The notes beneath the pieces are model-generated. The model searched no databases and was not told the DNA's origin. It was given only the letters and a program-made list of their open reading frames with translations. From positions 1-38,536 of the forward strand of contig NIVC01004669.1 of the NCBI GenBank assembly GCA_002269645.1: a DNA stretch of 38,536 nucleotides, given 5' to 3'. The translations under genes were made by a program, and so were the position numbers. Below are positions 1,098-32,982 of this stretch, piece after piece. Numbering within the stretch: the first letter of the stretch is position 1; each line of letters opens with the position of its first letter. The stretch comes from Macrostomum lignano. Lineage: Eukaryota.

Positions 1098-13144
<12,047 letters not shown>

Positions 13145-13207
13145 TTTCAGCTGTTGTCGCTGAAATGTATATGTTGGCCTTGACAGGTGAAATGGTAAAC
13201 TGGCCAC

Positions 13208-15447: not shown

Positions 15448-16313
15448 CTATAGCATCAAATTCGCAGCAACTTCAGAGTCGCTCAGAGCTCTCTCTGACA
15501 CTCCGAAGCATCTCATGAAGCCCTCGAAGACGCGGTTGTGACCGGAACTGCGGCTGATGGCTCCGATCTGCACGCTGCTGCCGAAGTCCGCGCACGAGGT
15601 CGAAGCGGTGGCCGAGCCGCTGGTGGCCTGTCGAGTTCCGTTGACGAGGATCCTGACTTCCGGTTTCTGCCTGTCGTACACCGCGGCAATGTGGGTCCAA
15701 CCGCTGGCCGTGTCGGTGGGTCCTGACACTCGGACCTTGAATGCAACGGTGAACTCGACGTCGGTAGTTGTAGGATAAAGCCACAATCGAGTGTGGTATG
15801 AAGAAGGCATGGTGAGGCCCTCCAGCAGAGGCATCGAACCTCTCGCTGGGTTGGTGACCTTGACCCACACTGACATGGTGAAGCTGGTGAGACACACCGA
15901 AGTCAGCTGGTCAATGTTGAACCTCTCTGACACACCCGACTGACCAGTGAAGTTGACGGCGCTGTCCGTGTACTGCATCGGGATGTTCTCCTGCAGGTCG
16001 AGATGGCCGCTGTTCGAGACCGCATTGCGAGTCCGAGTGGCGTTGCTCATGGGCCAGAAGGCGACGAGGCCGAGCTGGCGCAGGGCGCTCCACGCCTGGC
16101 AGTCGGTGTCGTTCGTCAGACTGACGGTCTGGAGGCTGTCCGACATGTTGCAGACGCCTGCGCGGTGGCTCCAGGCGATGCAGGGACGACGGAGCTGAGA
16201 GCACAGGAAGGCGCACATGCGGGCGCTCGAGGCCGCCAGCGAGTGCTGTGCAGCTCGGCGTTCGCACCGATGCAGAAAAGCAGGCCGAGAAGCAGCGGCA
16301 GAAGCAGAAGCAT
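15448..16313 (-). pseudogene. Secreted PAN-like + LamG/ConA-like (Laminin_G_3) protein, copy 1, frameshifted
   Basis: The signal peptide MLLLLPLLLGLLFCIGANA (ATG 16313) is out of frame with the body because of a 43-bp deletion relative to copy 2. The body has CAFLC..C..C and FTMSVWV..WTHIAAVYD..ILVNG..QIGA..FEG..RALSDSEV. An upstream ATG (16368) gives the 306-aa ORF. Confidence 0.75.
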
Positions 16314-18555
16314 CGCAATCCAAACAAACATCGAAGAGGCAAAGTGAGACTGAGATTGTAGTCAGCAAATTTATCTTGGCTGCCTGTCAACATGCAGAAC
16401 TTTATTAACCATGCTCCACTCTTGTGCCCAGTTCTGGTAAATTGAACTACAGAATTTTTTCATGAAATCACTGAGCATGCAGAGTGCAATTTGCGCGGGT
16501 TTTTTATACTTAAAATGAGCCATAATGGATGGATTTAGAAAACATGGCTCGTATACTTTTTCTAAGGTCATGGATGATGCATGGCGGCAAAAGTGTTGCT
16601 AAGAAGCAAAAATATTTTTGGATGACAGCTGATCTACTTTCAGTAGCAAGATCGTGTTATGCCTTGTCAAAAACTAAAAACCTAAAGAGTTTCTATGTAT
16701 ATGTACGAACTTACTTAATATACCTTTAATATTATATGCTAGATAAGAACTCCACTGTAAGTGTATACACAAATAACTGAGTGAGAAAAGTGAAACCCAT
16801 CACCAAATTAGGTTGGCTAACACTTAGACAACTGTTTAATAATGATAACAGTTTATGGATTTGCTACACCATATTTTATTTAGTTATTAAGAATTTAATA
16901 AGAATTATTTCTTTACTTATTAAAAGATGCATAGTCAGTAAAATTATTGTACAGTTATAAAAATGTGAATGAACAAAGTTTTTCAAAATCAAAAGTTTAC
17001 TTTAATTCATAAATAAATGTTCCATTTTATTTTAATATTTTCTGTTACTAAAGAAGTTCAATGAGGTAAAAATGACAAATAGAATTCATAATGATAAAAT
17101 ATATCCAAGTTTTATCCTGCTTATATATTTTTTCCTATAAAAACAACTATATAATAACCATGAATAAAAGGAAATAATTAAGATGTTATCATTAGTAATG
17201 CGCAATTCATGTGATATAAAAATCGCCACAAAAAAATTTAAATAAAAAACCAACTAATCATTAGTCTAATGCTATAAAAACAACTTCTGTGAGTATAAAA
17301 ACAAGAAAGGTTAAGTTAGCAACGAACAAACCTTGAGTAGTGATACTGTAGTTAAAGGTCATTTAGAAACTTCTAAATAAAAACGTACATGTACATGCAG
17401 TGCAACTCTTGTCTTGGAGATGGGGGCGACAAAAACTTAGTTCAATCAGTGACAAATCATGGGATTGAATTCTCTCTAGTAAGAATTATTCCATATGCTT
17501 CTTTCATAACTGAATTATTTTAGTCAGCCATTTGCCTATTGGGTACATGAAAGCTATGGACCAATAAAAATTATCACGACGCGATAACTTTTAAAATTCA
17601 ATCTGCGACCTGCAAAATTAAACGTTTGTTGACATTGGCTCGTTGCGTTTAAACAAATGGAAGGATTTCATACATATTAAAAGAATTAATTGCACCTTAT
17701 ATGTTAGAAATATCGCTTTTTTATTTTAAATAGAGGAGTAAAAACATCATTAAAAATTAACGAGAGTACCAATCAACTTGTTTCTGAAATCGTCATAGCC
17801 AGCAGTCGCAAAGGCGCGCTGGCCTGCACCTACTTCAAAATCAACGAGCACCATAAGGATTGTCTTGCACTAAGGGCAGTTAGCCTGCTTGAGGCTCATT
17901 CACACAAATTAAGCCAATAATTTTGTGATCACACCTGCCTACATGTACATATTTTCATCCCTAGGGCTGTGAAAACGCAGTGGCGCGGTAGCTGTTTAGC
18001 ACCAGCCAGGCATCTATTTAGGGGGGGGGGGGTCACCTGTTAGGCAGCTGGTGCAAATCTTTCCTTCACGGATGCCACATGTTTGAGCGCATTCTGTTAT
18101 TACTCGTAGTAAAGTCTCTTTGCTTGGATATGTTGTACATGTGATATGTATATTATAAACTGAGGCAATATTGCTTACTGAACTTCTGCAAGGGAAAAAA
18201 ATGACAGTAACGCTTCTGATTGGTATAGTTGTATTTTAGTCCTTCAAATCTGAACTGTTTATTTAAAATCCAAAAAATATCGCGTCAATTGCACGTTAAT
18301 GTAGATGTAGATGTTTACTATGTAGATAGTAAAAATATCTGGAAATCTGCAGACAGCCGAAGTGACCGCGAAACAGACCGTACGTTATAGTGAAACACCC
18401 CTTGAATGCTGGTTCTGTAGCCAGCTGCTTACAGCAATGTAACTGACTTGCATTCAGATGGATAAGCTGTTGGTAGGAATGTTTAGAGACCTGATCGAGT
18501 ACATTGGACGTCTAACATTAGATTGAATCGTTTTCTAAGTCTGCTGGCACCCAGC

Positions 18556-19482: not shown

Positions 19483-19946
19483 GCCTTGGTGACGCTGTAG
19501 ACTCGTTCTTGCTTTTAAATCAGTTTTGACAATTGCAATGCAGCTGCAGACTGAAGCTTCTCAGCAGCTTTTTGTATTTTAATGCTTTCCCTCCGCTCTT
19601 GTGTTGCTCTAGTTGGCTAAGGCTGCCTTTTTGAGCCTGAATCTCCCATTGGAGAAAAATGAGGAAGAAAATGAGCCAGCCTCCCAATTGAGTTGCTTGG
19701 CGAGTTCAAACTCGCTGTCTGAATGACAGAAATTTCGTCTGAAGACAGTGGCCGGCTACCATGACACAGCGAATGCAGTAATAGTGAAATTCTGGTCAGG
19801 ACCCAGAGTCCTGCTCGAATTCTTAAGCCCAAGAATAAATGCATAACTGTTCTGTCGCCACCCTTTGTCAAAATTAGCTCGTAGCATGTAGCATGTAGGA
19901 AAGTATTTTAGCCTGTCGCAAACAATTCACCCTCAGATTAGCATTG

Positions 19947-20425
19947 ATTCACCCACTATTCACTCCCTGATTCATTCATGATTCACCCACTATTCACCCC
20001 CTGATTCATCCATGATTCACCCACTATTCACCGCCTGATTCATCCATGATTCACCCACTATTCACCGCCTGATTCATCCATGATTCACCCACTATTCACC
20101 GCCTGATTCATCCATGATTCACCCACTATTCACCGCCTGATTCATCCATGATTCACCCACTATTCACCCCAGATTGATCCATGATTCACCCACTATTGAC
20201 CCCTGATTAATCCATGATTCACCCACTATCCACCCCCTGATTCATCCATGATTCACCCACTATTCACCGCCTGATTCATCCATGATTCACCCACTATTCA
20301 CCGCCTGATTCATCCATGATTCACCTACTATTCACCGCCAATTCATCCATGGTTCACCCACTATTCACCCCCTGATTCATCCATGATTCACCTACTATTC
20401 ACCGCCAATTCATCCATGATTCACC
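19947..20425. repeat. 34-bp minisatellite ATTCACCCACTATTCACCGCCTGATTCATCCATG, ~14 copies
   Basis: Period 34 (19947, 19981, 20015 ...). Confidence 0.95.
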
Positions 20426-20789: not shown

Positions 20790-20965
20790 CTTGTCCCCGT
20801 CCCAGTCCCTGTCCTAGTCCCTGTCCCAGTCTCTGTCCCCAGTCCCAGTCCCAGTCCCAGTCCCAGTCCCAGTCCCAGTCCCTGTCCCTGTCCTAGTCCC
20901 TGTCCCAGTCTCTGTCCCCAGTCCCAGTCCCTGTCCCTGTCCCAGTCCCAGTCCCTGTCCCCAGT

Positions 20966-20998
<33 letters not shown>

Positions 20999-21505
20999 TG
21001 TCCCCAGTCCCAGTCCCAGTCCCAGTCCCTGTCCCAGTCCCTGTCCCTGTCCCAGCCCCAGTCCCAGTCCCAGTCCCTGTCCCAGTCTCTGTCCCCAGTC
21101 CCAGTCTCAGTCCCTGTCCCAGTCTCAGTCCCTGTCCCAGTCCCAGTCCCTGTCCCCAGTCCCAGTCCCAGTCTCAGTCCCTGTCCCCAGTCCCAGTCCC
21201 AGTCCCAGTCCCTGTCCCAGTCCCTGTCCCTGTCCCAGCCCCAGTCCCAGTCCCTGTCCCAGTCTCTGTCCCCAGTCCCAGTCTCAGTCCCTGTCCCAGT
21301 CTCAGTCCCTGTCCCAGTCTCAGTCCCAGTCTCAGTCCCAGTCCCAGTCTCAGTCCCAGTCCCTGTCCCAGCCCCAGTCCCAGTCCCAGTCCCTGGTCCC
21401 TGTCCCCAGTCCCAGTCCCAGTCCCTGTCCCAGCCCCAGTCCCAGTCCCAGTCCCAGTCCCTGGTCCCAGTCCCTGTCCCCAGTCCCAGTCCCAGTCTCA
21501 GTCAC
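20790..21505. repeat. (CCCAGT/CCCTGT)n hexamer repeat
   Basis: Direct; the minus strand reads GGGACT/GGGACA runs. Confidence 0.95.
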
Positions 21506-23088
21506 TGGCTTTTTTCCTTATACTCCTTGTACGAAAGTGTAATCTTTGTCAAACATTCTCCATATGGTGATAAATGAGATAAATTATAGTATTATGAAAT
21601 TAGGGGACTAGTGCTCGATATAACTTTCTCATCCCCATCACGATTGTAGGTTCAATTTAATAGTATTGATGAAGAAAGATCACTGTGAATGGAATTAACG
21701 AGACTGAGTTATTCTATTTGTACAGCCTTTGCGAATCCTACAAAAATAAAGTTGACGCGGACAGACAAAAATCCATGTGTTGATGGACAAACACAAGTAG
21801 GATTAAAGGTGATAAAGCTTTTAACACTTATTACTAGTGCAATAACGAATCAATCTAGGCAGTTTCATTATTTGGTAAAATCACATATAAATAATTTTAT
21901 TGGGTTAGCATAAAAGTTGAGTCAAAGTACTTACTATATAGGGCTTAGAGATTCGGCAGAATAAACTTAAATAGAAACTAAAGCTTAGAGACAGAAAGAA
22001 ATGCAAGGTTAAAGGAAATTTGAGCGTTCGTTGTGCCTAAGAATAAAAACAATAGTATCCAACACAATTGTGCCCAGCAGCGCAAGACGAAGCTCTTGGG
22101 GAGGAGCTGCGGGCACGCCCAGGACCGACGCCCAACCCCGAGTGGCGTGGCAACCGAGGGATGGACGCGCGGACCGCGGGCCGCACAAGAGAACAGCAAA
22201 AGAACTTGGACTGAACCTCTCCCAGATACTCCAACGCAACTAGAGTACTGTAAAACTGAGGAGCCTAACCGCCTAACCCTCGCCCCCCCCCGTAGCAACC
22301 ATATGCAGGTCTAGAGTTAGTTCTCATGCTCTGTTTGTATAAACCCTGCCATTGTTAACCATGTGGGATCCCACACCATAGACGGCATGGGACGAAATTC
22401 GATCTCTTCTACGATCCTTTTTTCTCAGGTTGCTTACACAATTCAGTCTGCAAGTTTTTTGAGTTCAAGTTTAATTACAGAAAATAGAGCCAACCGCGGC
22501 GATCTCAATTGTGAGACTACAGAGCACGGCAGAAGACATCGATTTAGTGGTAGACTGATATTAGTTCTTCTCATTTATCGGATTACTCGTATAAGTACAT
22601 ATAGTAAGCAGATTTACTTTTACTTTTACTAGTTAAAGGTACCGATGCATGCATGTACCGATGTACTGCGGCAATTTTTTTGTAATAAAATTTTCGAAAT
22701 GCTGTTATGAATCAGTGATTTTACGGGCATTCAATTCTGTAACGAGTGTCTAAAATACTATACAGCCTGCCGATCTGCCATTTATTACAAGACTGGATGA
22801 CACATTCGCTTCATTGCTGCGATACATGCCTGCTGTTTACTTTAATTCAGCTTTTTAGAAGCGTCTATATGACATGACAAGTTATACCACAAGATTTGTA
22901 CCTCTGTATCAAATACGCTCGTAATTAAGACTGGATAACTAACACGTCATTAAATATTTGTAGTTGAAATATTTTACACAGTAAAACATCTTACTAATAC
23001 CCGTCAATTAAGGCTTATCTTAAATAATTATATTTCTGAGCTTCCAAGTTAACACGATATGAGTAGGGGAAAAAGCGCAAATGAAAAT

Positions 23089-23637
23089 CTACTTGACAGA
23101 ACGCAGCCGCCACAGGCCGTCATTTAAACAGTGCACAGTCTCGATGCCAACTCCTTTGTTCTTGCTGGCAATCTCGTCCGCGCTCATCGCCGTCAAGCCG
23201 ATTGCTAACGCGTGCTGTTTGCCTTCGGCCATGACGGCAACAACTGTGCTAGCTGGCACCTGGGACAGCCGGCCGCCAGGCGTGGTCAGGCCCGGGCACA
23301 TCACATTGGACCCGTTCAGCAGGAATTTGATAGCGCCCTTGTCCGCCTGCATGTGCGGCAGCATGAACGGATATCTGTGCAGCAGTTTCAAGCTGGGATA
23401 CAGCGGCGAGTCGCGCTGCCTGAAGAACAGCACCTCGCCAGCCGGGTTGGCGTACAGCTCGATGTGCTCGTGGCATTTGACAACGCTGAGCGTTTCCTTC
23501 TTGGGTAGAATCTGGTCAACGTAATCTGCGCATCCCGGATACTGCGTCAGGATGGTGTTTCTGATACCCTTCTGGACACTGTTCTTGGCGTTGTTTACGG
23601 ACGAGATGTTCTCTTTGTCGTCGAATTTGCGAAACAT
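23089..23637 (-). CDS. MCTS1: Malignant T-cell-amplified sequence 1 / Tma20 (PUA-domain translation reinitiation and ribosome recycling factor), intronless CDS
   Basis: 182 aa: MFRKFD..SVQKGIR..KCHEHIE..LFFRQRD..YPSLKLLHRYPF..DKGAIKF..GSNVMCPGLT..AEGKQHALAIG..NKGVGIE.VH.LNDGLW. Preceded by CCTTCCCACAG|CC ATG. Confidence 0.97.
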   Translation of the reverse strand: MFRKFDDKENISSVNNAKNSVQKGIRNTILTQYPGCADYVDQILPKKETLSVVKCHEHIELYANPAGEVLFFRQRDSPLYPSLKLLHRYPFMLPHMQADKGAIKFLLNGSNVMCPGLTTPGGRLSQVPASTVVAVMAEGKQHALAIGLTAMSADEIASKNKGVGIETVHCLNDGLWRLRSVK

Positions 23638-23723
23638 GGCTGTGGGAAGGTTGCAGTGATTTGTTTAAATTATTATCAAGCAAGACTGAATATAAGTAGA
23701 AACGAAAGTAGTAAGTTCGTAGC

Positions 23724-23885
23724 TCTTAACGCTGCTACCTACACCTGCCTCCCTTTACACTGCTACCTACACCTGCCTCCCTTCACGCTGCTACCCTACA
23801 CCTGCCTCCCTTTACACTGCTACATACACCTGCCTCCCTTTACACTGCTACATACACCTGCCTCCCTTTACACTGCTACCCTAAA
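23724..23885. repeat. 28-bp minisatellite ACACTGCTACCTACACCTGCCTCCCTTT, ~5-6 copies
   Basis: Direct. Confidence 0.9.
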
Positions 23886-23916
23886 CCTGCGTCTTTAACA
23901 CTACTACCATGCTTGG

Positions 23917-24068
23917 GCGCAACCTAGGGATTCACCCGGCCGTTTCTATTGGCAACACACACATGTAAGCCGCTATTGGACGGAATAGTAGTCACGCGAC
24001 TGCTCTCAGCCAATAGCGACTTACATGTGTTGCCAATAGAAACGGCCGAGTGATTCCCAAGGTTGCGC
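23917..24068. mobile_element. 152-bp foldback/MITE-like element
   Basis: ~60-bp inverted arms GCGCAACCTAGGGATTCACCCGGCCGTTTCTATTGGCAACAC..CTATTGG / CCAATAG..GTGTTGCCAATAGAAACGGCCGAGTGATTCCCAAGGTTGCGC; no clear TSD. Confidence 0.65.
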
Positions 24069-24614
24069 ATGTATGACTACTAACCTACATTTTCCACCCT
24101 TACTACCTACTACCCGACTACAGCTCCCTCACACACTAGCTTTCAGAACTGCACAATCCTTCACGTTCTGTACATATCTAGTTTCTGTTACGGGCCTTGC
24201 ATTTTTCTATCCTCTATCCTAATATGCCTTAAATTTATTGAAAGTGACAGAATGTTCTCAGGGTGTAATCAAATCACGAATATCATGATTTCAAGATCAT
24301 ATTACGTATTTGTATTTAATAAACTCTTTAAATGCATGAAACAGCGAAAACAGAGAAAGACCGTTTGTTAGCAAGCGTATAGGCTCAGTAAATAAATATA
24401 TTATAACAGAAATTAGTTACAATTTGCCGTCAAAATTTGACTTTAATCAAATCAAATAAAATAAAATGTCTATCACAATTGTTTTGTAGAGCCGGACAAT
24501 ATAAAAAGGGAAATCTCCAGAAGCAATTTCGAGGCTCTGAAATGTAAAGAGAAGCAAGTGACTTAAAAGTTACCCAGCTTAATCCTGTAGTAACAGACCT
24601 AGTAGATATTTGCT

Positions 24615-24703
24615 ATCATTCAGAGAGAAGATTAGGCACCATTCATAGACCCAACAATAGTCAGGCTCATATGGTTGATCCAGGAAATGTCTCATCATTG
24701 ATG
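24615..24703 (-). ncRNA. SNORD7: Box C/D snoRNA, mgU6-47-like (U6 Am47) with a second guide to the 18S 5' end
   Basis: C ATGATGA 24698-24692. D guide CTAATCTTCTCT+CTGA pairs 12 nt with U6 AGAGAAGAUUAG, and D+5 falls on A47. D' guide GGATCAACCA pairs with 18S UGGUUGAUCC. Confidence 0.85.
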
Positions 24704-24736
24704 TACAGCTGGTTAGTAGGATATTGGAAAGGGGCA

Positions 24737-24828
24737 ATAAATCAGAGAGAAGTTTAAAAAACGCAATTCATTTAGCCAATAGTTACATTGACTCATATGG
24801 TTGATCCAAAAATGTCTTATTATTTTAC
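24737..24828 (-). pseudogene. Degenerate copy of the mgU6-47-like snoRNA
   Basis: Shares GGATCAACCATATGA and CTTCTCTCTGA, but box C reads ATAATAA and the U6 guide is mutated. Confidence 0.6.
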
Positions 24829-25008
24829 AACATGAACTCCTGATTTATTGGGTTAGAAATAGCATTGTCTCACCTCAAAGCTGCAGATCTTAACGCACAA
24901 ACTGGAGTTGATTGAACTCCTGCAAAAATAAAATGGTAAATTAACAATCAGACAATAAAAGGTCTGGCACACTACTTAAATGAGCTAATTTGCATAGTTA
25001 TAATTGAC

Positions 25009-25082
25009 AGTAGTCAGATAGGGGCGCTTGTCTGCACATTTGAGAACTAAGAAAGACTAATCCATATAAATCATCATTACAT
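25009..25082 (-). ncRNA. Box C/D snoRNA, U80/snR60-like D guide (28S AUAG[G]GGCG) plus adjacent D' guide
   Basis: C ATGATGA 25077-25071; D guide CGCCCCTAT+CTGA; D' guide GATTAGTCTTT+CTTA pairs with 28S AAAGACUAAUC. Confidence 0.75.
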
Positions 25083-25267
25083 GTGGTAGAGTAGCTTGCT
25101 TAAGAGTTCAGAATCAAACAACTGATAAGAGACGCTTACCTGCGAAAAAAAATTGAATTCGACATATTTTGAAGCAATCAGCCGCATTCGCTGCTGAAAA
25201 GATTTAATTGATTGACTTAAACAATAGTAGCTTATTATTTGCGCATTTTACTAGAGTCCTAGAAAGT

Positions 25268-25353
25268 ATTTCTCAGGTATATCTAATAACAGTCCGCATT
25301 TATGTTATTTACATCGGACAAGAGGTGTCAAATTGTTTTTGTCATCATTTAGC
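25268..25353 (-). ncRNA. Box C/D snoRNA, 28S CAA[G]AGGUGUCA guide with a degenerate U44-like D guide
   Basis: C 25348-25342; TGACACCTCTTGT+CCGA; D CTGA 25276-25273; paralog of 28224-28305. Confidence 0.7.
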
Positions 25354-25403
25354 TAATAAAAAAGCAATCTGATTTAAAAAACTAGAGGCTAGTTATATTA
25401 AAA

Positions 25404-25482
25404 ACAAATCAGAACCCAGTGCTATCATCACATTGTCAATAATCAGGTCAAAGTGAAGAATTCTGAGTTATCATCACGGATT
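25404..25482 (-). ncRNA. SNORD37: Box C/D snoRNA, U37-like D' guide plus SNORD88/snR76-like D guide
   Basis: Perfect C GTGATGA, D' CTGA, C' GTGATGA and D CTGA. TTCTTCACTTTGAC pairs 14 nt with 28S GUCAAAGUGAAGAA; AGCACTGGG pairs with 28S CCCAGUGCU. Confidence 0.88.
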
Positions 25483-25655
25483 CTTAATATAACATAAGCC
25501 TCTACAGAAGGTCCTACTGATCTTACCTTGCTAAATTAGTTGCAGCACTAGCCAGCCAAGCAAGAATATGTACTAAAATTTTGAGAGGAAAGTGACTACT
25601 TAAAGTAATTGAAAAAAATGCCTAAGATAGCAGCGTAAAATACTATAATTAGTAA

Positions 25656-25742
25656 TAAAGTCAGATTAGGGATATTTGTTAATCACAACTGGAGTTTTCT
25701 AAAACATTATCATAGTAGGTAAGGAATTATTCATCACTAGTT
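25656..25742 (-). ncRNA. Box C/D snoRNA, paralog of the U50-like RNA at 29750
   Basis: C GTGATGA 25737-25731; D' guide CCTTACCTAC pairs with 28S GUAGGUAAGG; D guide ATATCCCTAAT+CTGA is degenerate. Confidence 0.65.
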
Positions 25743-25947
25743 AGTTTCTGGTACGAGTATACAAATTATATATTTATTTAATTATATTACGAGCATATTG
25801 GCAGTCACTTACAAGTAAACTGAATCATGCAGCATCAGGTGCGTCACATAATCTGAGGATTTTAGGGAGGCACTAACGTAAAATGAGGAAGATACGTTAA
25901 GCAAAACACTTAGGCCTCGAATAGGAGCTAAAATACCAGCTTTATCT

Positions 25948-26029
25948 AGACGACAGAGCGCTGTAGTGCTTTATATTGTATCCAATACACTGATAAGGTT
26001 GATACTAAATTGCTGGATCGTCATGATAA
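25948..26029 (-). ncRNA. Box C/D snoRNA, U48-like, degenerate boxes
   Basis: C ATGACGA, D CTGT; guide CACTACAGCGCT identical to the copy at 30010. Confidence 0.55.
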
Positions 26030-26224
26030 AAATATCCAAGCATGTATCCTATCTGATAGATAAGCTTTATTACACCATTGCCAGCTTATTTGCTTAACTA
26101 TCGGTTTATAAGTTACACGATAAGAAGAAACTTAGAAATTCGTCTTAGAACACACGCAGTCAAACCAGCTATCTACAAGTATAATTTTCTTAAATATGCT
26201 ATAAGACCATATGTACACCGTAGA

Positions 26225-26313
26225 GCATCCATCTCAGCTGCCAATATGGTTAAATTTCATTATTGAAATCAAACAGCATGACGGTGTAAAATGAAATCAT
26301 CATTAATGGATGC
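26225..26313 (-). ncRNA. Box C/D snoRNA, ACCGTCATG family copy 1
   Basis: C 26303-26297, D 26237-26234, 8-bp terminal stem GCATCCAT/ATGGATGC; D' guide CACCGTCATGCTGT+TTGA. Confidence 0.8.
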
Positions 26314-26474
26314 TGAACTGTATATGGGATGTTAGAAACTAAAACAATGTCAGTTTTACCTGTTTTAACTCTTGTTTGAAATTTGAACGGGCAAACTGGA
26401 ATGCAGAGTAGAGATGGAGAATTTCTGGACACATAAAGAGTTGGCATTGGCTGATTTTGGTAAATGTTAGAAAA

Positions 26475-26559
26475 ATTTCTTAGATGGTGATGCATGGTAG
26501 ATAATTTTCATTTAAAGAAACCTATCAAAAGCCAAAGGTGATCAATATCATCATAACAG
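26475..26559 (-). ncRNA. Box C/D snoRNA, U33/snR55-like, D box variant CTAA
   Basis: C 26554-26548; guide CCATGCATCACCAT. Confidence 0.6.
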
Positions 26560-26763
26560 TAAGCATAGGCAAAAATATAAAAATAATTCTGGCTATTAAC
26601 TCACCTGTTGGCTCTGTAGACTTGTTGAACCAGTGCCATTTTGCCATAAAAACGAATCGGATTCTAAAACAGTGTTAAAACAAAGAATGGATGAATTTCT
26701 TAAGACGGGTGTCTTATGAAATACTTCAATACCATATGAAAGTTTCAACTAACACTTTCTGAT

Positions 26764-26868
26764 TCACATCAGATAGGGGCGTTAGTCAGCAGTTTTGTAA
26801 TTGGTTAAAATGTTTATTAACTAATTATAAAGCTCAGAAAGACTAATCAATAGAGATCATCATGTAAA
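26764..26868 (-). ncRNA. Box C/D snoRNA, U80/snR60-like D guide plus adjacent D' guide (copy 2)
   Basis: C 26863-26857; GATTAGTCTTT+CTGA; CGCCCCTAT+CTGA. Confidence 0.8.
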
Positions 26869-27029
26869 TAGAAAGTGAAAATTATACTACTAATAGTAGA
26901 TAAAAAAGACGCCTTACCCCTCAAAGCCCCGAGATGACATTGGTCGGTAGAAGACATCTGAAATAAAAAATAACATGAAAATTGCAATTAAAGATGCAAA
27001 AACTCACTTAAATAACAAAACAACTGTTT

Positions 27030-27117
27030 AATCATCAGGTAGAGCTAATAATAGTCCGCATCTAATCAAGCATTATCGGACGATTGAACTGTGGAAATTA
27101 AAATTTCATCATAATTA
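27030..27117 (-). ncRNA. SNORD44: Box C/D snoRNA, U44-like (18S UAG[A]GCUAAUA)
   Basis: C 27112-27106; D guide TATTAGCTCTAC+CTGA; D+5 matches the U44 site (human Am166 as recalled). Confidence 0.78.
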
Positions 27118-27157
27118 ACAAGAATCTAAACAAATATAGGTGGCAGCCATGATTATG

Positions 27158-27236
27158 ATAGTTCAGAACCCAGTGCTAACATCAGTTGGTTTTTGTTCAG
27201 TTCAAAGTGAAGAATTATGGGTTATCATCATTATTT
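27158..27236 (-). ncRNA. SNORD37: Box C/D snoRNA, U37-like plus SNORD88-like guides (copy 2)
   Basis: C 27231-27225; TTCTTCACTTTGAA+CTGA; AGCACTGGGTT+CTGA. Confidence 0.82.
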
Positions 27237-27636
27237 ATAACATTGCGTGCCATTTCTGCCATTATAAAAAGGGCGGTTTTGTTAAATACTACTATTAATA
27301 GTAATGTAATCCGCGCTCATCAAAAGCAGACACTTTGGGAGATAAACAAAAGATCTCTACTCTGCTTCTGGATTTTATGCGGTTGTCAGCGTGATCTAGC
27401 GACTAAATGAATCAGTCACCAATAAGATATTTTTTGCGTGTCGGTGATTGAAACGAGAAAGTCGCAACTAACAAAAACACAAGTTCAACAGTGCAAGCCT
27501 ACCTGACTTTGCAAGTTAACACTTGACTTGATATCCAACCAGGAAAAATGCACTAAAATGGGCAAGTGAAAATATGGCTACAGTAGAAACGAGTTTTTTA
27601 AAAGCACATATTTTTTTTATTAATACCAATAAAAAA

Positions 27637-27713
27637 GCAAATCAGATGGTGATGCATGGAAATTATATATCATGACCAAATCAAACACGGATGTGTTATT
27701 TTCATCACTTATC
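27637..27713 (-). ncRNA. SNORD33: Box C/D snoRNA, U33/snR55-like (18S GUGG[U]GGUGCAUGG)
   Basis: C GTGATGA 27708-27702; CCATGCATCACCAT+CTGA forms 14 bp including 2 G.U with 18S. Confidence 0.82.
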
Positions 27714-27717
27714 TATA

Positions 27718-27788
27718 CACTGTCGGATCCAGAAGGGGGGTCAAAGGGGTCGGCTGACCTCACGGAAAAAATCCCGGATCCGCCACTG
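27718..27788. mobile_element. 71-bp MITE-like element
   Basis: Imperfect 13-bp TIRs CACTGTCGGATCC / GGATCCGCCACTG; a GC-rich island in AT-rich context. Confidence 0.5.
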
Positions 27789-27966
27789 CATTTATAGATA
27801 TGTTATACATTTAAATAGAGCTGAGCAATAAAAATTACCTTGGATGGATGTAGCAGTGAAACTTCATTGACGCGGCAAACTGGAAAGAAATTAAAAAAAT
27901 ATGACTTGTAAAAAAGATGTAGTTTTATCAAATAGGTACAACTAATAGGTAGCTAATAGGTAGATA

Positions 27967-28050
27967 AAATATCAGGCTTGAAAATTCTGTACATGCCGTA
28001 CACTGGGTACAGTTCATATGAACTATGCTATAATTAATTCATCATTGTAA
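27967..28050 (-). ncRNA. Box C/D snoRNA, U77/snR60-D'-like (28S GGUGA[A]CUAUGC)
   Basis: C 28045-28039; GCATAGTTCAT+ATGA; D CTGA 27975-27972. Confidence 0.78.
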
Positions 28051-28223
28051 AAAGTAAAATAAGGGTGGGGAAAAATACTTAAGCATTGCTAACTGACCTG
28101 AAGCACTGTTAAGAAGGCTTACAATTTTCCAGCTGGATTTTAGCGTCCTCTAAAATGAAATAAGTGAATATGAAAACTTGCATCGATTCTTAACGATTTC
28201 TATTAGGACAAAAGAGCTTAATA

Positions 28224-28305
28224 CTTGATCAGATAGAGCTAATAAACTCCGCATTTACTTAGTAAATATCAGACAAGAGGTGTCAATATTCTATCATCAT
28301 TTATA
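28224..28305 (-). ncRNA. SNORD44: Box C/D snoRNA, double guide: 28S CAA[G]AGGUGUCA (D') and U44-like 18S site (D)
   Basis: C 28300-28294; TGACACCTCTTGT+CTGA; TATTAGCTCTAT+CTGA. Confidence 0.85.
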
Positions 28306-28869
28306 CCTAAAATCTGTAAACTGTGTGTCTGTGGCCAATTTTGTTCGCTATGGACTCTCAAACCGCTCAACCAAATGACACCGTTTTGCACCCCCCCAAC
28401 CTCACTACGGAGAGCGTCTTCCCAGTATTCCCACCTTAAAGTGCAAAAAGTTGCTGCAAAGAAAGCGGGATTTTTTTTACTTAATCCTCTATAGCGGCGC
28501 TCCACCTTTATCAAACCTACTCAAATTTGACACAAACAATCTCTAACTATTTCGACACAAGCGTGTAAAATGTCGAGTCATAAAGTCAATCCTGTACGGA
28601 GCTGTGCACGTTTAAAGTTAGTCTGCTTTTTGTCAGCGTAGCAACCACCCCAATCGTTTGGCTGCCGTAACTTTGCTTAACGCTAGCATGAAATTTGTTG
28701 CCGAACGATCAGTCGCTCATTCCCTCCTCCAACATCTGGCGGTCTCAAACTGGTTGGGTTGGCGTCCGGATGGCGGGTGGCTTAGAGAAGTCAGGTTCAC
28801 CATCACGATAATGTCTTGCCTCGTGCTGCTCGGGTTTGATTAGTATTAGAATTTGATTAATGTATTTTT

Positions 28870-29142
28870 TCTATTGACCTGCTAACCTACCTGAAATTCT
28901 ATTGACCTGCCACCCTACCTTAAATTCTGTTGACCTGCCACCCTACCTGAAATTCTATTGACCTGCCACCCTACCTTAAATTCTATTGACCTGCCACCCT
29001 ACCTTAAATTCTATTGACCTGCCACCCTACCTTAAATTCTATTGACCTGCCACCCTACCTTAAATTCTATTGACCTGCAACCTACCAGAGATTTTATTGA
29101 CCTGCCACCCTACCTGAAATTCTATTGACTTGCCACCCTACC
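28870..29142. repeat. 28-bp minisatellite TTCTATTGACCTGCCACCCTACCTTAAA, ~10 copies
   Basis: Period 28 (28981, 29009 ...). Confidence 0.95.
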
Positions 29143-29484
29143 ATTCTTTAGACTTATTTTCTGTCTCGATATCAAGTCTCAACTCTGTAACTCAATCAGG
29201 ACAGTAACTGTAAGCATGTGAAGTTTGTCTGCTTTTTCTGGTGTTTGTGCCGCTCATTAATCTCTCATCTCATCGCTTAGTCAGATCAATCAATGCTTGT
29301 CTCAAATCTTTATTTAACACGAATTTACTACATTCATCAAACCTCTATCCTAACTTTAAAGTTTTTGTTTCAGTATGACTTTAAATTTAAGGATGTATGC
29401 AATAAAGAGTTCCGGGGATTGGAATTCTGTGGGTTTAAAATCCGGGGGTTTTAAAGAGTTTGTAAGGTATTAATAAAGGCTTTA

Positions 29485-29561
29485 AAACTCAGAGACAAAT
29501 AGAACTAAACTCATGCGAGATCATACAACATGACGGTATAAAATCTGAGTCATCATGAATG
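29485..29561 (-). ncRNA. Box C/D snoRNA, ACCGTCATG family copy 2
   Basis: C 29556-29550; ACCGTCATGTTGT+ATGA; D 29492-29489. Confidence 0.7.
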
Positions 29562-29749
29562 AAGCCAATCTATTGCTTGTAACAAAGATTATACATAAAC
29601 CCAAGTAATATGAAAAAAAGTGAATTGAAGCTTACCTTAAATTTAGATCAGAGTCACACTGGATCGCTAAATCTGAAAATAATTAGTGACAAAATTTATT
29701 TTTTGATTTACTTCTAAAAATTTAAGCTTACATATATGTAATTTAGACT

Positions 29750-29826
29750 AGCATTTCAGATTCGGGAAATATTGCATTCACATTATTAATAAATCATAGT
29801 AGATAAGGAAATAGTCATCATTAAAA
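29750..29826 (-). ncRNA. Box C/D snoRNA, U50-like D guide (28S CUUC[G]GGA) plus a neighbouring D' guide
   Basis: C 29821-29815; TCCCGAAT+CTGA; D' guide CCTTATCTAC pairs with 28S GUAGAUAAGG. Confidence 0.7.
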
Positions 29827-30009
29827 ACATAATAGTAGAGCTTATTACTGAAAAAATTGAGTTGGTTATTGGTTTTGAATTCACTTACTTTTTATATTGA
29901 TTTTAAAAGGCCCCAGGACAGCTTAGACCTGTAGTAATAAAGAGAAAGTGGCATTGTTAGAGAAATTAAAAAATATTCTACAATATAAAAACACTTCTGA
30001 TCAATATAT

Positions 30010-30093
30010 ATACATCAGAGCGCTGTAGTGTCTTATCACGTCCCTTTAAGAGATCACAGATAAGGTAAGCAAACGTATTTATCATCATAAAAA
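30010..30093 (-). ncRNA. Box C/D snoRNA, U48-like
   Basis: C 30088-30082; CACTACAGCGCT+CTGA resembles human U48 CACCGCAGCGCU-CUGA as recalled. Confidence 0.7.
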
Positions 30094-30151
30094 GTAGGCT
30101 TATACGCAAGGCTATCTACACTATAGTATATAGGCATAAAAATGGCAAATC

Positions 30152-30243
30152 AAGGGCTCAGACAGCAAATTTTCTTCAAAGAATCGCCAGCGTACACAAA
30201 TTGGTACACCAACTTCCGACGGTAATTCCAATCATCATTGAAA
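30152..30243 (-). ncRNA. SNORD65: Box C/D snoRNA, SNORD65/snR77-like (18S GCGG[U]AAUUCCA)
   Basis: C 30238-30232; TGGAATTACCG-T+CGGA (variant D'); D 30161-30158 preceded by TTTGCTGT (possible U24-like site). Confidence 0.75.
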
Positions 30244-30355
30244 ACGCCCAAGTTGCAGTTAATAGACCTAGTCCTAAGTATTAGTAAAAAAGTATATATT
30301 GTCCTAATTAAAAATCGAATACCAAAAAAGCAGCAAGTGTCGTATGTATACAGAA

Positions 30356-30443
30356 CTGTAATCAGCAGCCATTGAAGTTGGCATAAAGTATTTACTACAT
30401 AGAGCTTATTGCACTAAGCCAGGGATAACAAACATCATATTAC
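30356..30443 (-). ncRNA. Box C/D snoRNA, snR38/SNORD1-like (28S CACAG[G]GAUAAC)
   Basis: C ATGATGT 30438-30432; GTTATCCCTG-G+CTTA; D 30365-30362. Confidence 0.7.
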
Positions 30444-30642
30444 ATTTCTGAGGACACGTTGCTTGCTTGCTACTGACTTCTACTCGTACTAAAGAGAACA
30501 GAACTATTTGCTTCGGATTTTTTCAGACTGCTTTTAATTAGAAGATCGATTTAAGAACAAATACTTTCGTTAGTAAAATGGAGATAAACGATGATTCTGA
30601 ATGATGATGAGCAGCAAAGGTGTTAAGGGAAATGCCTATTGT

Positions 30643-30727
30643 ATTCACCTCAGCTGCCATTGTTTTTAATTATCAAAAGTGTGTCAAACAGCATGACGGT
30701 GTATAAAAATTGGTCATCATTTTTGGT
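30643..30727 (-). ncRNA. Box C/D snoRNA, ACCGTCATG family copy 3
   Basis: C 30720-30714, D 30653-30650, terminal stem ATTCACC/GGTGAAT. Confidence 0.8.
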
Positions 30728-30975
30728 GAATACAAGCGACGTACATGCTTAAATGAAAATTTCAGGCTATGTTTATGTATGATCACAAAAAGCAAAATAC
30801 AGTCAAAACCAATAATTACCTTAAATTTAGAAAATGAAACACTGGACCGGTAGACTGAGAACTTGTTAATGATCTACTACCAGTACCTATGAAAGTAGAG
30901 TTTTTGGGCGACAGGTTGTACTTTTTATAAAATGGCAAGCATAGCTTACATGTTCATTAAAATGTACTCAATAAA

Positions 30976-31053
30976 CTACATCAGATGGTGATGCATGTGA
31001 AATTGTCATGTTAACTCAAAACAAACAGTTGTGAATAATTATCATCATTTTTG
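30976..31053 (-). ncRNA. SNORD33: Box C/D snoRNA, U33/snR55-like (copy 3)
   Basis: C 31048-31042; CATGCATCACCAT+CTGA. Confidence 0.8.
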
Positions 31054-31170
31054 ACAGCCAGTTTTTTAAACCAAGCCACAACCTAACCTTATCTCTAAGG
31101 ATTCTGAATCTGATATAAAACTTAAAATCGATATTCTAGATTTTAAATAGTGTCATAAGGACATTGATAG

Positions 31171-31251
31171 CATCCACATCAGCTGCCATAGTTTTATTAT
31201 CAGGCGTATCAAACAGCATGACGGTGTAAAATTGATCATCATTTGTGGATG
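31171..31251 (-). ncRNA. Box C/D snoRNA, ACCGTCATG family copy 4
   Basis: C 31242-31236, D 31182-31179, 8-bp terminal stem CATCCACA/TGTGGATG. Confidence 0.8.
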
Positions 31252-31301
31252 ACAAACTGGTGCGTTAATTAGGCTATAAAAACTAACCATATACTAATAA
31301 T

Positions 31302-31687
31302 CGCTGTCAGAGAACGCTCAGAACCATAATTTACATCCAAACGGCTCTGCAAAAAAGAAGTGCAAGCACTCGCTTTTCGGGTCACGCTTCTATAGTGCTC
31401 ACTAACAAGTCAAAGGCGGTATAATAAATAATCAGTCTTCGACTATAAAAAGGAATTTAGCGAGCACCCTTGAAGCAAACCCTAAAGTGACAATAATAGT
31501 CAGCACTTCACTAAGAGAGCCTGTTCAAGCCAGCTGGCGCGCACACCAGCAAATCAAATTTGTGCCTGAAAGAAAAGGTTAACAAATAGAGGCAAAAAAA
31601 ACCCCCAATTTGGAAGACCTTTCATAACTATTCAAGCACATTTGAAAAGCTCAGTCAGAGAATGGATTAAAGCATTCATCATCGTTT
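31302..31687 (-). ncRNA. Long box C/D RNA with a guide for 28S UGAA[U]GGAUUAA (SNORD17/snR65-like site); 3' end uncertain
   Basis: C 31682-31676; TTAATCCATTCT+CTGA; candidate D 31310-31307; paralog at 32316-32629. Confidence 0.55.
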
Positions 31688-31860
31688 CTCTGACAAATGT
31701 TTCACAGTTTCGAAGAAAAACTCACCGAATAAATGTTGTAAGACTTTGTAGGCGATTTTTGTATGCCAGCTCCTAAAATTTGCAAAAGTTAGTTGAAATA
31801 AAATTCGCCAATGCCATACATGAGACAGCGCCAATGCCTAAAAGTTGATTGAATAAATTT

Positions 31861-31941
31861 AAAATTCAGAATGAAAATAGTATCTACAGAAAGCACAAGA
31901 GTGCATTCCGACATATGCTTGTCAAGTATTCATCATTAAAT
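31861..31941 (-). ncRNA. SNORD27: Box C/D snoRNA, U27/snR74-like (18S CAU[A]UGCUUGUC)
   Basis: C 31936-31930; GACAAGCATATG-T+CGGA (12-nt match); D 31869-31866. Confidence 0.8.
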
Positions 31942-32132
31942 TAAAAAAGCAAATTGTTAAAGTACCAGATGTTTCAGAACTTACATTTTCAGAAGCAGAT
32001 TTGCTTTTGTTAATTGCTCGTGACAAGGGAAAAACAGCAAGTCTGCAAATGTGTGTAAACAAAGAACGATATTTAGAGGGACATAGGTGCAAATATTGAT
32101 TAAGTAAGTTGTAAATAAGCACACAAAAGTAA

Positions 32133-32629: not shown

Positions 32630-32982
32630 TCTGATATTTTTATTTTGCAATCATGACTGTTGCATCTTATCTTACATTGGTACTTTAAGTAGCTACAAAT
32701 TTGCCTAAAATGAGTTTCCTTAAGCTTTTTATTCAAAATTTAGTTAATTTTGGTTTGCAATAGAGACTAATACAAGTAATAAGATAGGAATGAGATTTTT
32801 TTAATTATATACAATAAAAAAAGTCAAAAATTTGAGCTTTTAAAAATTAGCAAATTTTGATTTATGACAAAAAATGCTCTTTTGGAACATCATTTAATAA
32901 TGCTAAAGGTGTACAGTGCAATATATTATATAATAAATTGACACTATTTTCAAGCACACATCTGTAGGTTTTCACCCTTGGC

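What the first reader, a model, noticed from the sequence alone, without database searches (positions are those of the whole stretch)
23089..24600. MCTS1 may be the coding end of the snoRNA host, or the downstream gene of an SL-resolved operon
Seen: the intronless MCTS1 CDS has a pyrimidine-rich acceptor (CCTTCCCACAG) ending 2 nt before the ATG and lies ~0.9 kb downstream, same strand, of the last host exon (starts 24536). A possible donor GTAACT lies near 24419 and an AATAAA near 24233-24238. Established: snoRNA hosts are often translation-related genes, and acceptors next to the ATG are typical of SL trans-spliced flatworm genes. Inference: either a 5' UTR of more than 10 micro-exons couples ribosome methylation guides to a ribosome-recycling factor, or a snoRNA-host/MCTS1 polycistron is cut by trans-splicing.
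Basis: inference. Interest (0 to 1): 0.7.

Follow-up and report, generated by a model that had tools for sequence, protein, structure and literature searches.

The report
MCTS1 gene beside a snoRNA host
In the flatworm Macrostomum lignano an intronless MCTS1 translation-factor gene lies 0.9 kb downstream of a non-coding gene that carries about 28 snoRNAs in its introns; the sequence argues against the two being one spliced gene, and an ordinary spliced-leader arrangement is more likely, though no RNA data could be reached to prove it.

Summary
The window is contig NIVC01004669.1 of the Macrostomum lignano Mlig_3_7 assembly. On the minus strand a 182-aa MCTS1 ORF (23637-23089) has CCTTCCCACAG ending at 23640, 2 nt before the ATG. 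It lies 899 nt downstream of the last acceptor (exon start 24536) of a non-coding host with at least 17 micro-exons and about 28 intronic C/D snoRNAs.

The "coding end of the host" reading is disfavoured:
- GTAACT at 24420 scores 0.0 bits against the host's own donors (4.1-12.2).
- The would-be last intron holds no snoRNA.
- Every cis model gives a leader of at least 842 nt with at least 14 upstream AUGs.
- The terminal exon carries three poly(A) hexamers.

The operon reading is allowed but unproven. The gap is 595-785 nt, or about 260-450 nt after removing repeats. That is under the 1 kb limit published for this species, but only if MCTS1 is SL trans-spliced. A promoter of its own in the spacer is equally possible: a GC-richer block there holds a 152-nt CCAAT-bearing palindrome.

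No transcript data were reachable. I rate this a new member of a known kind, of modest interest.

The parts
23089..23637 (-). Intronless MCTS1/Tma20 coding sequence, 182 aa including the stop codon
   Evidence: ORF. Pfam Pre-PUA 9.8e-25 and PUA 4.9e-15. 60-66% identity to mollusc and trematode MCTS1. Human MCTS1 structures 5ons/3r90 at E 1e-73 over residues 1-181.
23640..23650 (-). Acceptor candidate A: ccttcccacAG, exon would start at 23639, 2 nt before the ATG
   Evidence: Read. The AG is kept in all haplotypes. It matches the NCAG part of the published trans-splice motif YTNCAG, but has C instead of T at -5. It scores poorly (-8.3) with the T-rich host-acceptor matrix because it is C-rich.
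23686..23705 (-). Acceptor candidate B: tcgtttctacttatattcAG, exon would start at 23685, giving a 48-nt leader
   Evidence: Best-scoring acceptor (7.3 bits) between 24400 and 23560. Kept in all haplotypes.
23641..23724 (-). AT-rich (33% GC) proximal spacer with branch-point-like TTGAT and CTTAC
23725..23908 (-). 28-bp minisatellite, 6.5 copies here and about 11 in haplotype L001/L002
   Evidence: TRF; alignment.
23917..24068 (.). 152-nt near-perfect palindrome with 2 CCAAT and 2 ATTGG and a donor-like CAT|GTAAGT at 24024. It could be a promoter element or a small foldback/MITE insertion.
   Evidence: Inverted repeat. Fold of -113 kcal/mol, z -12. CCAAT count. Donor score 9.8. No other copy in the window or loci. 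0/152 substitutions between haplotypes.
24234..24239 (-).
   Evidence: Replaced by CACTA----AAGG in L001/L002.
24315..24320 (-). ATTAAA, a candidate host poly(A) signal present in all haplotypes
24442..24447 (-). ATTAAA, a candidate host poly(A) signal present in all haplotypes. Cleavage would fall near 24425, giving a terminal exon of about 110 nt.
   Evidence: The cleavage position is inferred.
24415..24420 (-).
   Evidence: 0.0 bits with the matrix built from 17 host donors, whose leave-one-out range is 4.1-12.2.
24421..24536 (-). Minimal terminal exon of the snoRNA host. The acceptor AG is at 24538-24537; the 3' end is not mapped.
   Evidence: Acceptor scores 11.9 bits. A D box ends 83 nt upstream. 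The exon contains no ATG.
24537..24873 (-). Last host intron with twin C/D snoRNAs at about 24828-24738 and 24701-24616
   Evidence: In the window the first twin has its C box mutated.
24874..32042 (-). Body of the non-coding host: at least 17 micro-exons (840 nt in total, no ORF over 60 aa) and about 26 more intronic C/D snoRNAs
22781..22846 (-). Candidate MCTS1 poly(A) signals: ATTAAA at 22846-22841 and AATAAA at 22786-22781, implying a 3' UTR of about 250-310 nt
   Evidence: Usage is inferred.

Best explanation
MCTS1 is a separate cistron, not the coding last exon of the snoRNA host.

The host is a GAS5/UHG-type non-coding gene. Each of its introns releases C/D snoRNAs, and it ends in a short terminal exon that starts at 24536 and is polyadenylated somewhere between about 24425 and 24215.

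The MCTS1 mRNA most likely gets its 5' end by addition of the 35-nt M. lignano spliced leader. The acceptor is an orphan one, at 23640 (2-nt leader) or 23686 (48-nt leader), because no usable donor lies upstream of it in the same RNA.

Where the pre-mRNA starts is not resolved. I give about 0.34 to a promoter inside the 0.6-0.8 kb spacer, where the GC-richer block with the CCAAT palindrome is the candidate. I give about 0.28 to read-through from the host promoter, which would make it an operon in the published sense.

Shown here: gene identities, geometry, splice-signal strengths, haplotype differences, absence of coding capacity in the host, and the uAUG load of cis models. Inferred: SL addition, choice of poly(A) site, and the origin of the pre-mRNA.
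For: - Species and SL biology: the contig belongs to NIVC01, M. lignano. 45.3% of conserved genes there are SL trans-spliced, and the rule is an acceptor near the 5' end with no upstream donor in cis.
- Two well-formed acceptors lie within 50 nt of the ATG and are kept in all three haplotypes.
- No consensus donor ends the terminal host exon: GTAACT scores 0.0 bits against 4.1-12.2 for the 17 real donors.
- The terminal exon has three AWTAAA hexamers. Every other host exon is 36-67 nt and ends in GT[AG]AG-like donors.
- Nearly every host acceptor has a snoRNA D box 77-105 nt upstream. The MCTS1 acceptors have none, and no snoRNA-like hit lies between 24536 and 23640.
- All cis-spliced models give leaders of 842-1400 nt with 14-21 uAUGs.
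- GenBank-derived CDS calls for the window and L003 begin at codon 3. This would fit a transcript model cut next to the start codon, but I could not verify how it arose.
Against: - No RNA evidence of any kind was reachable: no transcript contig holds the protein, no supplementary table lists it, and the metagenome scan was empty.
- Acceptor A lacks the T at -5 of YTNCAG and doubles as a fair Kozak context (G at -3).
- Acceptor-like sites are common, at 3.8 per kb per strand.
- 55% of conserved genes in this species are not trans-spliced.
- With acceptor A, the AUG at the end of the SL would open a 15-codon out-of-frame uORF overlapping the start.
Confidence: 0.62

Rival explanations
1. Operon (a sub-case of the best explanation, scored on its own). 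Pol II starting at the host promoter reads through the host poly(A) site. The downstream MCTS1 cistron is then released by SL trans-splicing at 23640/23686, so snoRNA output and MCTS1 share one promoter.
For: - The genes are on the same strand with nothing credible between them: only repeat-borne ORFs and hairpin hits.
- The gap from the three candidate poly(A) signals to the acceptor is 595-785 nt. It is about 260-450 nt after subtracting the minisatellite (184 nt) and the palindrome (152 nt).
- That is under the repeat-adjusted 1 kb threshold used for M. lignano, where 40% of trans-spliced genes are placed in operons and some operons start with a non-trans-spliced gene.
- That paper notes that repeats inflate intercistronic gaps. 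A foldback element inserted in the same host gene in another haplotype shows such insertions happen here.
Against: - The modal intercistronic distance is about 100 bp, and distances for non-trans-spliced to trans-spliced pairs are unimodal, so the 1 kb rule is permissive.
- The raw gap exceeds the 300 bp limit used for parasitic flatworms.
- The spacer holds strong donor-like sites: 24024 at 9.8 bits and 24088 at 7.5 bits. In a read-through RNA these would compete with the SL.
- The GC-richer CCAAT palindrome is placed where a promoter could be.
- There is no snoRNA linkage at trematode MCTS1 loci.
Confidence: 0.28
2. Ordinary monocistronic gene with no splicing at all. MCTS1 has its own transcription start inside 23641-24200 and an unspliced capped leader, and CACAGCC before the ATG is simply start-codon context.
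For: - 55% of conserved M. lignano genes are not trans-spliced.
- A purine at -3 and CC at -2/-1 fit a Kozak-like context.
- The chance of an acceptor-like site so close to the ATG is about 4%.
- TATATT at about 23692 and the CCAAT palindrome 280-430 nt upstream could be promoter parts.
Against: - Two acceptor-like sites with branch-point-like motifs sit in an intron-like, 33% GC tract right at the ATG.
- Housekeeping and neoblast-enriched conserved genes are preferentially trans-spliced in this species.
- The annotated CDS starts at codon 3 in two copies.
Confidence: 0.25
3. Coding end of the host. The host's micro-exons form the 5' UTR of the main MCTS1 mRNA by cis-splicing. The route could be GTAACT at 24420, the GTAAGT at 24024, or skipping the 24536 exon so that donor 24873 joins acceptor 23640.
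For: - Same strand and close. The penultimate donor GAG|GTGAGA is strong, so skipping the terminal exon needs no new donor.
- In parasitic flatworms the same acceptor is often used both in cis and by the SL, so minor chimeric isoforms are plausible.
- Many snoRNA hosts in other animals are translation-related genes (established knowledge).
Against: - GTAACT scores 0.0 bits.
- The 24024 donor sits in a -113 kcal/mol hairpin.
- The proximal acceptor at 24537 is strong (11.9 bits) while 23640 is weak by the same matrix.
- The connecting intron would be the only one without a correctly spaced snoRNA.
- Leaders would be 842-1400 nt with 14-21 uAUGs.
- There are three poly(A) hexamers in the terminal exon.
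- Cis-splicing is reported to be strongly avoided at operon-resolving acceptors.
Confidence: 0.07

Closest known systems
M. lignano SL-resolved operons and monocistronic SL trans-spliced genes (Wudarski et al. 2017, PMC5730564; Ustyantsev & Berezikov 2021, PMC8629364)
   Same: Same species. A single 35-nt SL ending in ATG. A CAG acceptor just upstream of the start codon of a conserved gene. A same-strand neighbour within the repeat-adjusted 1 kb limit, with repeats filling the gap.
   Different: The upstream partner would be a non-coding multi-snoRNA host rather than a protein gene. The gap is several times the modal 100 bp. SL usage is not shown for this gene.
Non-coding multi-snoRNA host genes of vertebrates (UHG/SNHG1, GAS5 type; from my own knowledge)
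   Same: Many short exons without an ORF. One or two C/D snoRNAs per intron at a fixed distance from the 3' splice site. A terminal exon with poly(A) signals.
   Different: This one is in a flatworm, with about 28 snoRNAs. Its 5' end and any TOP-type start were not determined. A protein gene follows within 0.9 kb in an organism that can resolve polycistrons.
Protein-coding snoRNA hosts among translation genes (ribosomal protein, eIF4A and EEF-type hosts; from my own knowledge)
   Same: A thematic link between rRNA-modification guides and a translation factor on one strand.
   Different: In those genes the snoRNAs sit in introns between coding exons. Here the CDS is intronless, no donor connects it to the host, and the leader would be loaded with uAUGs.
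C. elegans operons (Blumenthal; cited in PMC8629364)
   Same: Read-through past an upstream poly(A) site, coupled to trans-splicing of the downstream cistron.
   Different: About 100-nt intercistronic regions and a dedicated SL2. M. lignano has one SL, and the gap here is 0.6-0.8 kb.

Membership tests
MCTS1/Tma20 (PUA-domain reinitiation and recycling factor) | N-terminal Pre-PUA domain followed by a PUA domain in a protein of about 181 aa | tested here: met
   Pfam PF17832 at residues 5-90 and PF01472 at 96-171, both far above cut-off. Length 182 aa.
MCTS1/Tma20 (PUA-domain reinitiation and recycling factor) | Full-length collinear similarity to experimentally characterised MCTS1, better than to eIF2D | tested here: met
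   Human MCTS1 5ons/3r90 at E 1.4e-73 over residues 1-181. eIF2D only 1.2e-18. Best database relatives are named MCTS1.
MCTS1/Tma20 (PUA-domain reinitiation and recycling factor) | Binds DENR and the 40S subunit, and promotes reinitiation or recycling | not testable with these tools
   Biochemical property.
SL-resolved operon as defined for M. lignano (PMC8629364) | Adjacent genes on the same strand with no opposite-strand gene between them | tested here: met
   Only repeat-borne ORFs of 80 aa or less and hairpin hits lie between 24536 and 23640.
SL-resolved operon as defined for M. lignano (PMC8629364) | Repeat-adjusted intergenic distance below 1 kb | tested here: met
   595-785 nt raw, and about 260-450 nt after removing the minisatellite and palindrome. 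The host 3' end is inferred from hexamers only.
SL-resolved operon as defined for M. lignano (PMC8629364) | The downstream gene carries the SL at its 5' end | not testable with these tools
   No transcript or read data reachable.
SL-resolved operon as defined for M. lignano (PMC8629364) | A polycistronic precursor spanning both genes | not testable with these tools
   Needs RNA data.
Flatworm operon by the stricter criterion of PMC12582326 | Intergenic distance of 300 bp or less | tested here: not met
   The raw gap is at least 595 nt. That paper itself calls its threshold conservative.
Non-coding multi-snoRNA host gene (UHG/GAS5 type) | C/D snoRNAs inside introns, on the same strand as the exons | tested here: met
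   About 27 C/D-type Rfam hits, all on the minus strand and all below the gathering score. Canonical C and D boxes with terminal stems. They are flanked by consensus splice sites.
Non-coding multi-snoRNA host gene (UHG/GAS5 type) | Stereotyped distance from the snoRNA to the 3' splice site | tested here: met
   A D box ends 77-105 nt upstream of 13 of 18 acceptors.
Non-coding multi-snoRNA host gene (UHG/GAS5 type) | The spliced exons have no meaningful ORF | tested here: met
   Longest ATG ORF is 60 aa, with 20-22 stops per frame in 1162 nt.
Non-coding multi-snoRNA host gene (UHG/GAS5 type) | A 5' TOP-type transcription start | tested here: inconclusive
   The 5' end was not located. TATATAAT near 32812 and pyrimidine-rich stretches were seen by eye only.
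Protein-coding snoRNA host (MCTS1 as the host's coding exon) | A consensus donor that joins the last non-coding exon to the coding exon | tested here: not met
   GTAACT scores 0.0 bits. The only strong donor-like site, at 24024, lies inside a very stable hairpin.
Protein-coding snoRNA host (MCTS1 as the host's coding exon) | A leader compatible with translation of the main ORF | tested here: not met
   14-21 uAUGs in 842-1400 nt in the four added cis models, and 14 in 958 nt for the GTAACT model.
Protein-coding snoRNA host (MCTS1 as the host's coding exon) | Junction reads between host exons and the coding exon | not testable with these tools
   Needs RNA data.

The most novel reading that the evidence does not exclude
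A non-coding snoRNA host gene is the promoter-bearing first unit of an SL-resolved operon whose second cistron is MCTS1. One promoter would then set the output both of about 28 rRNA-methylation guides (from the introns) and of a ribosome recycling and reinitiation factor (from the trans-spliced downstream cistron). Minor cis-spliced host-MCTS1 chimeras might form at the same acceptor.
Probability: 0.28. Interest if true: 0.5.

Novelty: new member of a known kind. Interest (0 to 1): 0.3.

Why it matters
If the operon reading held, it would be an example of a non-coding snoRNA host acting as the first unit of a metazoan operon. It would tie ribosome modification to a translation-reinitiation factor under a single promoter. 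That factor may matter especially in flatworms, where every spliced leader ends in an AUG and can open a short upstream ORF.

As it stands, the locus is most simply an ordinary closely spaced gene pair in a genome where trans-splicing and operons are already documented genome-wide. The authors' public SL-read and poly(A) tracks probably already answer the question.

The practical value lies elsewhere. The host's terminal exon, the two acceptor candidates and the specific junctions to test are now defined.

Tried and rejected
- Rfam at gathering threshold found nothing. Only the E-value scan revealed the snoRNA series. Its miRNA hits at 23925-24060 are just the palindrome and I disregard them.
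- I looked for transcripts carrying the exact protein or its 180-aa and 128-aa variants. Only five genomic contigs of the same assembly came back.
- I searched supplementary tables of three M. lignano papers for MCTS1, snoRNA and operon entries and found none. Full-text searches found no paper on M. lignano MCTS1 or on flatworm snoRNA hosts.
- A metagenome scan with the first 30 nt of the CDS found nothing.
- No SL RNA gene is in the window.
- I compared the five assembly copies hoping for conservation contrast. They collapse to three haplotypes only 0-3% apart, too close to separate constrained from neutral sequence. The only useful differences were the loss of AATAAA and the repeat copy number.
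- I tested for conserved linkage at trematode MCTS1 loci. There was no snoRNA-like hit in Fasciola (10 kb upstream plus a 19.8 kb gene) or Echinostoma.
- The sigma-70 and terminator scan is irrelevant to a eukaryote and I ignored it.
- I considered reading the codon-3 start of the annotated CDS as proof of a trans-splice cut. I rejected it as proof because its origin cannot be checked, and the L005 call is truncated by assembly indels.
Full report
**Identity of the sequence.** The window is the whole 38,536-bp contig NIVC01004669.1 of assembly GCA_002269645.1. [quoted passage not shown] 2017, PMC5730564). Everything in the finding lies on the minus strand.

**Checking the observation.**
- The ORF at 23637-23089 encodes 182 aa. 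It has a Pre-PUA and a PUA domain. It is 60-66% identical to mollusc and trematode MCTS1. It aligns end to end with human MCTS1 crystal structures at E 1.4e-73. It is an intact MCTS1/Tma20 orthologue.
- The sequence ccttcccacag occupies 23650-23640 and is followed by 'cc' and the ATG.
- The last host acceptor is ...catttcag|agcctc, so that exon starts at 24536, 899 nt upstream of the ATG.
- GTAACT is at 24420-24415.
- All stated features are therefore present.

**The host is real.**
- An E-value Rfam scan gives about 27 C/D-box snoRNA matches between 24616 and 32631. All are on the minus strand and all are below gathering score.
- Many have canonical C and D boxes with terminal stems.
- Between them lie at least 17 micro-exons of 36-67 nt with consensus acceptors and GT[AG]AG-type donors.
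- A D box ends 77-105 nt upstream of 13 of 18 host acceptors, including the one at 24537. This spacing is typical of intron-processed snoRNAs.
- The spliced exons (840 nt, or 1162 nt with a long terminal exon) have no ORF over 60 aa and 20-22 stops in each frame. The host is a non-coding, GAS5/UHG-like gene.

**How much is chance.**
- Pyrimidine-rich CAG sites occur 3.8 times per kb per strand in this window. One ending within 10 nt of a given ATG has roughly a 4% chance. That is suggestive, not compelling.
- AWTAAA occurs 140 times in the window, so the three minus-strand hexamers after 24536 are about what the composition gives.
- GTAACT has no donor value (see below).

**Is MCTS1 the coding end of the host?** I built donor and acceptor matrices from the 17 host exons.
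- Real donors score 4.1-12.2 bits in leave-one-out. ATT|GTAACT scores 0.0.
- The strongest donor-like sites between 24536 and 23641 are CAT|GTAAGT at 24024 (9.8 bits) and AAT|GTAGGT at 24088 (7.5). The first lies in one arm of a 152-nt palindrome that folds at -113 kcal/mol (z = -12).
It must, however, beat the strong proximal acceptor at 24537 (11.9 bits).
- Whatever the route, the leader would be 842-1400 nt with 14-21 upstream AUGs.
- The connecting intron would be the only host intron without a properly spaced snoRNA.
- The terminal exon carries ATTAAA at 24447-24442 and 24320-24315, and AATAAA at 24239-24234.
- Together these make a cis-spliced MCTS1 mRNA unlikely as the main product. I put it at about 0.07. 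Minor chimeric isoforms remain possible, because flatworm acceptors are often used both in cis and by the SL (PMC12582326).

**What the other copies say.**
- The assembly holds five copies of the locus. They collapse into three haplotypes: the window; L003 = L005; and L001 = L002 over the aligned 25860-22700 segment (upstream, L001 lacks a stretch that L002 has). They are only 0-3% apart. That is too little divergence for a conservation test.
- Three differences are useful. The 28-bp minisatellite between palindrome and ATG has 6.5 copies in the window and about 11 in L001/L002, so spacing there is not constrained. Both acceptor AGs are kept everywhere.

**Trans-splicing and the operon reading.** The published facts for this species are as follows (Ustyantsev & Berezikov 2021, PMC8629364).
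- There is one 35-nt SL, CGGTCTCTTACTGCGAAGACTCAATTTATTGCATG.
- 30% of genes and 45.3% of conserved genes are trans-spliced.
- The acceptor motif is YTNCAG.
- An operon is called when a trans-spliced gene follows a same-strand neighbour within 1 kb after subtracting repeats. The modal gap is about 100 bp, and some operons begin with a non-trans-spliced gene.

Here the gap from the three candidate poly(A) signals to 23640 is 595-785 nt. It is about 260-450 nt without the minisatellite and palindrome. The pair would therefore be called an operon if MCTS1 carries the SL.

Several points argue for caution:
- Distances for non-trans-spliced to trans-spliced pairs are unimodal in that study, so the criterion is permissive.
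- The raw gap exceeds the 300 bp limit used for parasitic flatworms.
- A read-through RNA would contain strong donor-like sites that compete with the SL.
- The 400-nt GC-richer block (51% GC against 32-33% on either side) contains a palindrome with four CCAAT/ATTGG pentamers, where 0.35 are expected. It sits 280-430 nt upstream of the ATG, a position where a promoter could be.
- The palindrome could equally be a small foldback or MITE insertion. A 2.9-kb ORF-less foldback element has inserted into the same host gene in haplotype L001/L002. I could not search the rest of the genome for further copies.

**Indirect hint.** The GenBank-derived CDS of the window and of L003 starts at codon 3 (RKFDD..., 180 aa), whereas L001/L002 have the full 182 aa. 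A transcript model that begins within a few bases of the start codon is what a cut at a trans-splice peak would produce. It is not what a long leader would produce. I cannot verify how the call arose, and the L005 call (128 aa) is truncated by assembly indels. I count this only as weak support.

**Consequences of SL addition (inference).** Joined at 23639, the mRNA would read ...UUGCAUG|CCAUGUUU. The SL's AUG then opens a 15-codon out-of-frame uORF overlapping the start. The SL AUG sits in a weak context (U at -3), while the native AUG gains a G at -3. Joined at 23685, the SL's AUG opens a 7-codon uORF that ends before the main AUG. Both are compatible with translation by leaky scanning or reinitiation.

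**Conservation elsewhere.** Trematode MCTS1 genes are intron-bearing: Fasciola spans 19.8 kb and Echinostoma 5.7 kb. They show no snoRNA-like Rfam hit inside, or in the 10 kb upstream in Fasciola. The linkage is therefore not an old flatworm feature, as far as this small test goes.

**Verdict.**
The operon one is allowed by the published criterion but unproven.
- My best explanation, at 0.62, is a separate cistron whose 5' end is made by SL trans-splicing at 23640 or 23686. That splits almost evenly between an own promoter in the spacer (0.34) and read-through from the host (0.28).
- A plain unspliced gene has 0.25, and cis-splicing to the host has 0.07.
- This is a new member of known kinds: an SL-type gene or operon candidate next to a GAS5-like snoRNA host. 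It is of modest interest.
- The answer probably already exists in the authors' SL-read and poly(A) tracks, which I could not reach.

Noticed in passing
window 24828-24738 and 24701-24616 (minus strand): The last host intron holds two paralogous C/D snoRNAs with the same guide (GGATCAACCATATGAG). In the window the first one has its C box changed to ATAATAA, whereas all other haplotypes have ATGATGA, so this allele is probably dead.
   Followed up: partly
window 23917-24068: A 152-nt near-perfect palindrome (-113 kcal/mol, z -12) with 2 CCAAT and 2 ATTGG and a GTAAGT donor-like site. It has no substitutions between the three haplotypes (one 2-nt indel) and is embedded in G-rich 28-bp repeats. 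It produces spurious miRNA-family hits in Rfam. Whether it is a promoter element, a MITE or a hairpin-RNA source is undecided.
   Followed up: partly
L001 and L002 about 4766-7633, inserted at window 25865-25872: Haplotype L001/L002 carries a 2.9-kb ORF-less foldback element (inverted arms of at least 470 nt, 96-98% complementary). It sits exactly at the acceptor of host exon 25872-25813, with an 8-nt alignment overlap that looks like a target-site duplication. It may disrupt that exon in this haplotype.
   Followed up: partly
window 28197-31536 versus L001 2224-2430: L001 lacks about 3.3 kb of the host gene that the window and L002 have. That stretch includes several snoRNAs, so the snoRNA complement differs between copies.
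   Followed up: no
window 23725-23908, 28869-29142, 19925-20400, 20800-21500, 13203-13576: There are many G-rich minisatellites (28-bp, 34-bp and 31-bp units, and GGGACT hexamers) on the minus strand. The one upstream of MCTS1 varies from 6.5 to about 11 copies between haplotypes.
   Followed up: partly
window 23631-23637; loci L003/L004: The database CDS for this copy and for L003 starts at codon 3 (180 aa, RKFDD...), although the ATG is intact. L001/L002 are called at full length. The cause is unknown; it may be a transcript model cut next to the trans-splice site.
   Followed up: partly
window about 26030-25950 versus 30090-30020 (minus strand): A degenerate snoRNA copy (C box CATGACGA, D box CTGT) shares the guide AAGACACTACAGCGCTCTG with an intact snoRNA 4 kb upstream. 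This looks like a decaying duplicate inside the host.
   Followed up: no
window 32631-32480 and 31688-31500 (minus strand): A duplicated module: an sn2417-like snoRNA with guide TTAATCCATTCTCTGAC, followed by a GGTGTGCGCGCC... segment. The true 5' end and promoter of the host were not located. TATATAAT lies near 32812.
   Followed up: no
window 32980-33660: A cluster of short inverted repeats of the form CTATTTGTCTAG / CTAGACAAATAG upstream of the host. They may be MITE-like.
   Followed up: no
window 31941-31882 (minus strand): A SNORD27-like snoRNA whose guide ACAAGCATATG is complementary to the universally conserved 18S 5' region CATATGCTTGT. The 18S sequence is recalled from memory; no M. 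lignano rRNA was available to check it.
   Followed up: no
L006 (Fasciola hepatica) and L007 (Echinostoma caproni): Trematode MCTS1 genes span 19.8 kb and 5.7 kb with introns, whereas the M. lignano gene is intronless. That points to intron loss or a retrocopy origin in Macrostomum.
   Followed up: no
window 8988-10511 and 15448-16368 (minus strand): ORFs with KY-like Ig (PF23265) and Laminin_G_3 (PF13385) domains mark other genes downstream on the same strand. The region 2-12 kb is GC-rich with extreme strand skew.
   Followed up: no
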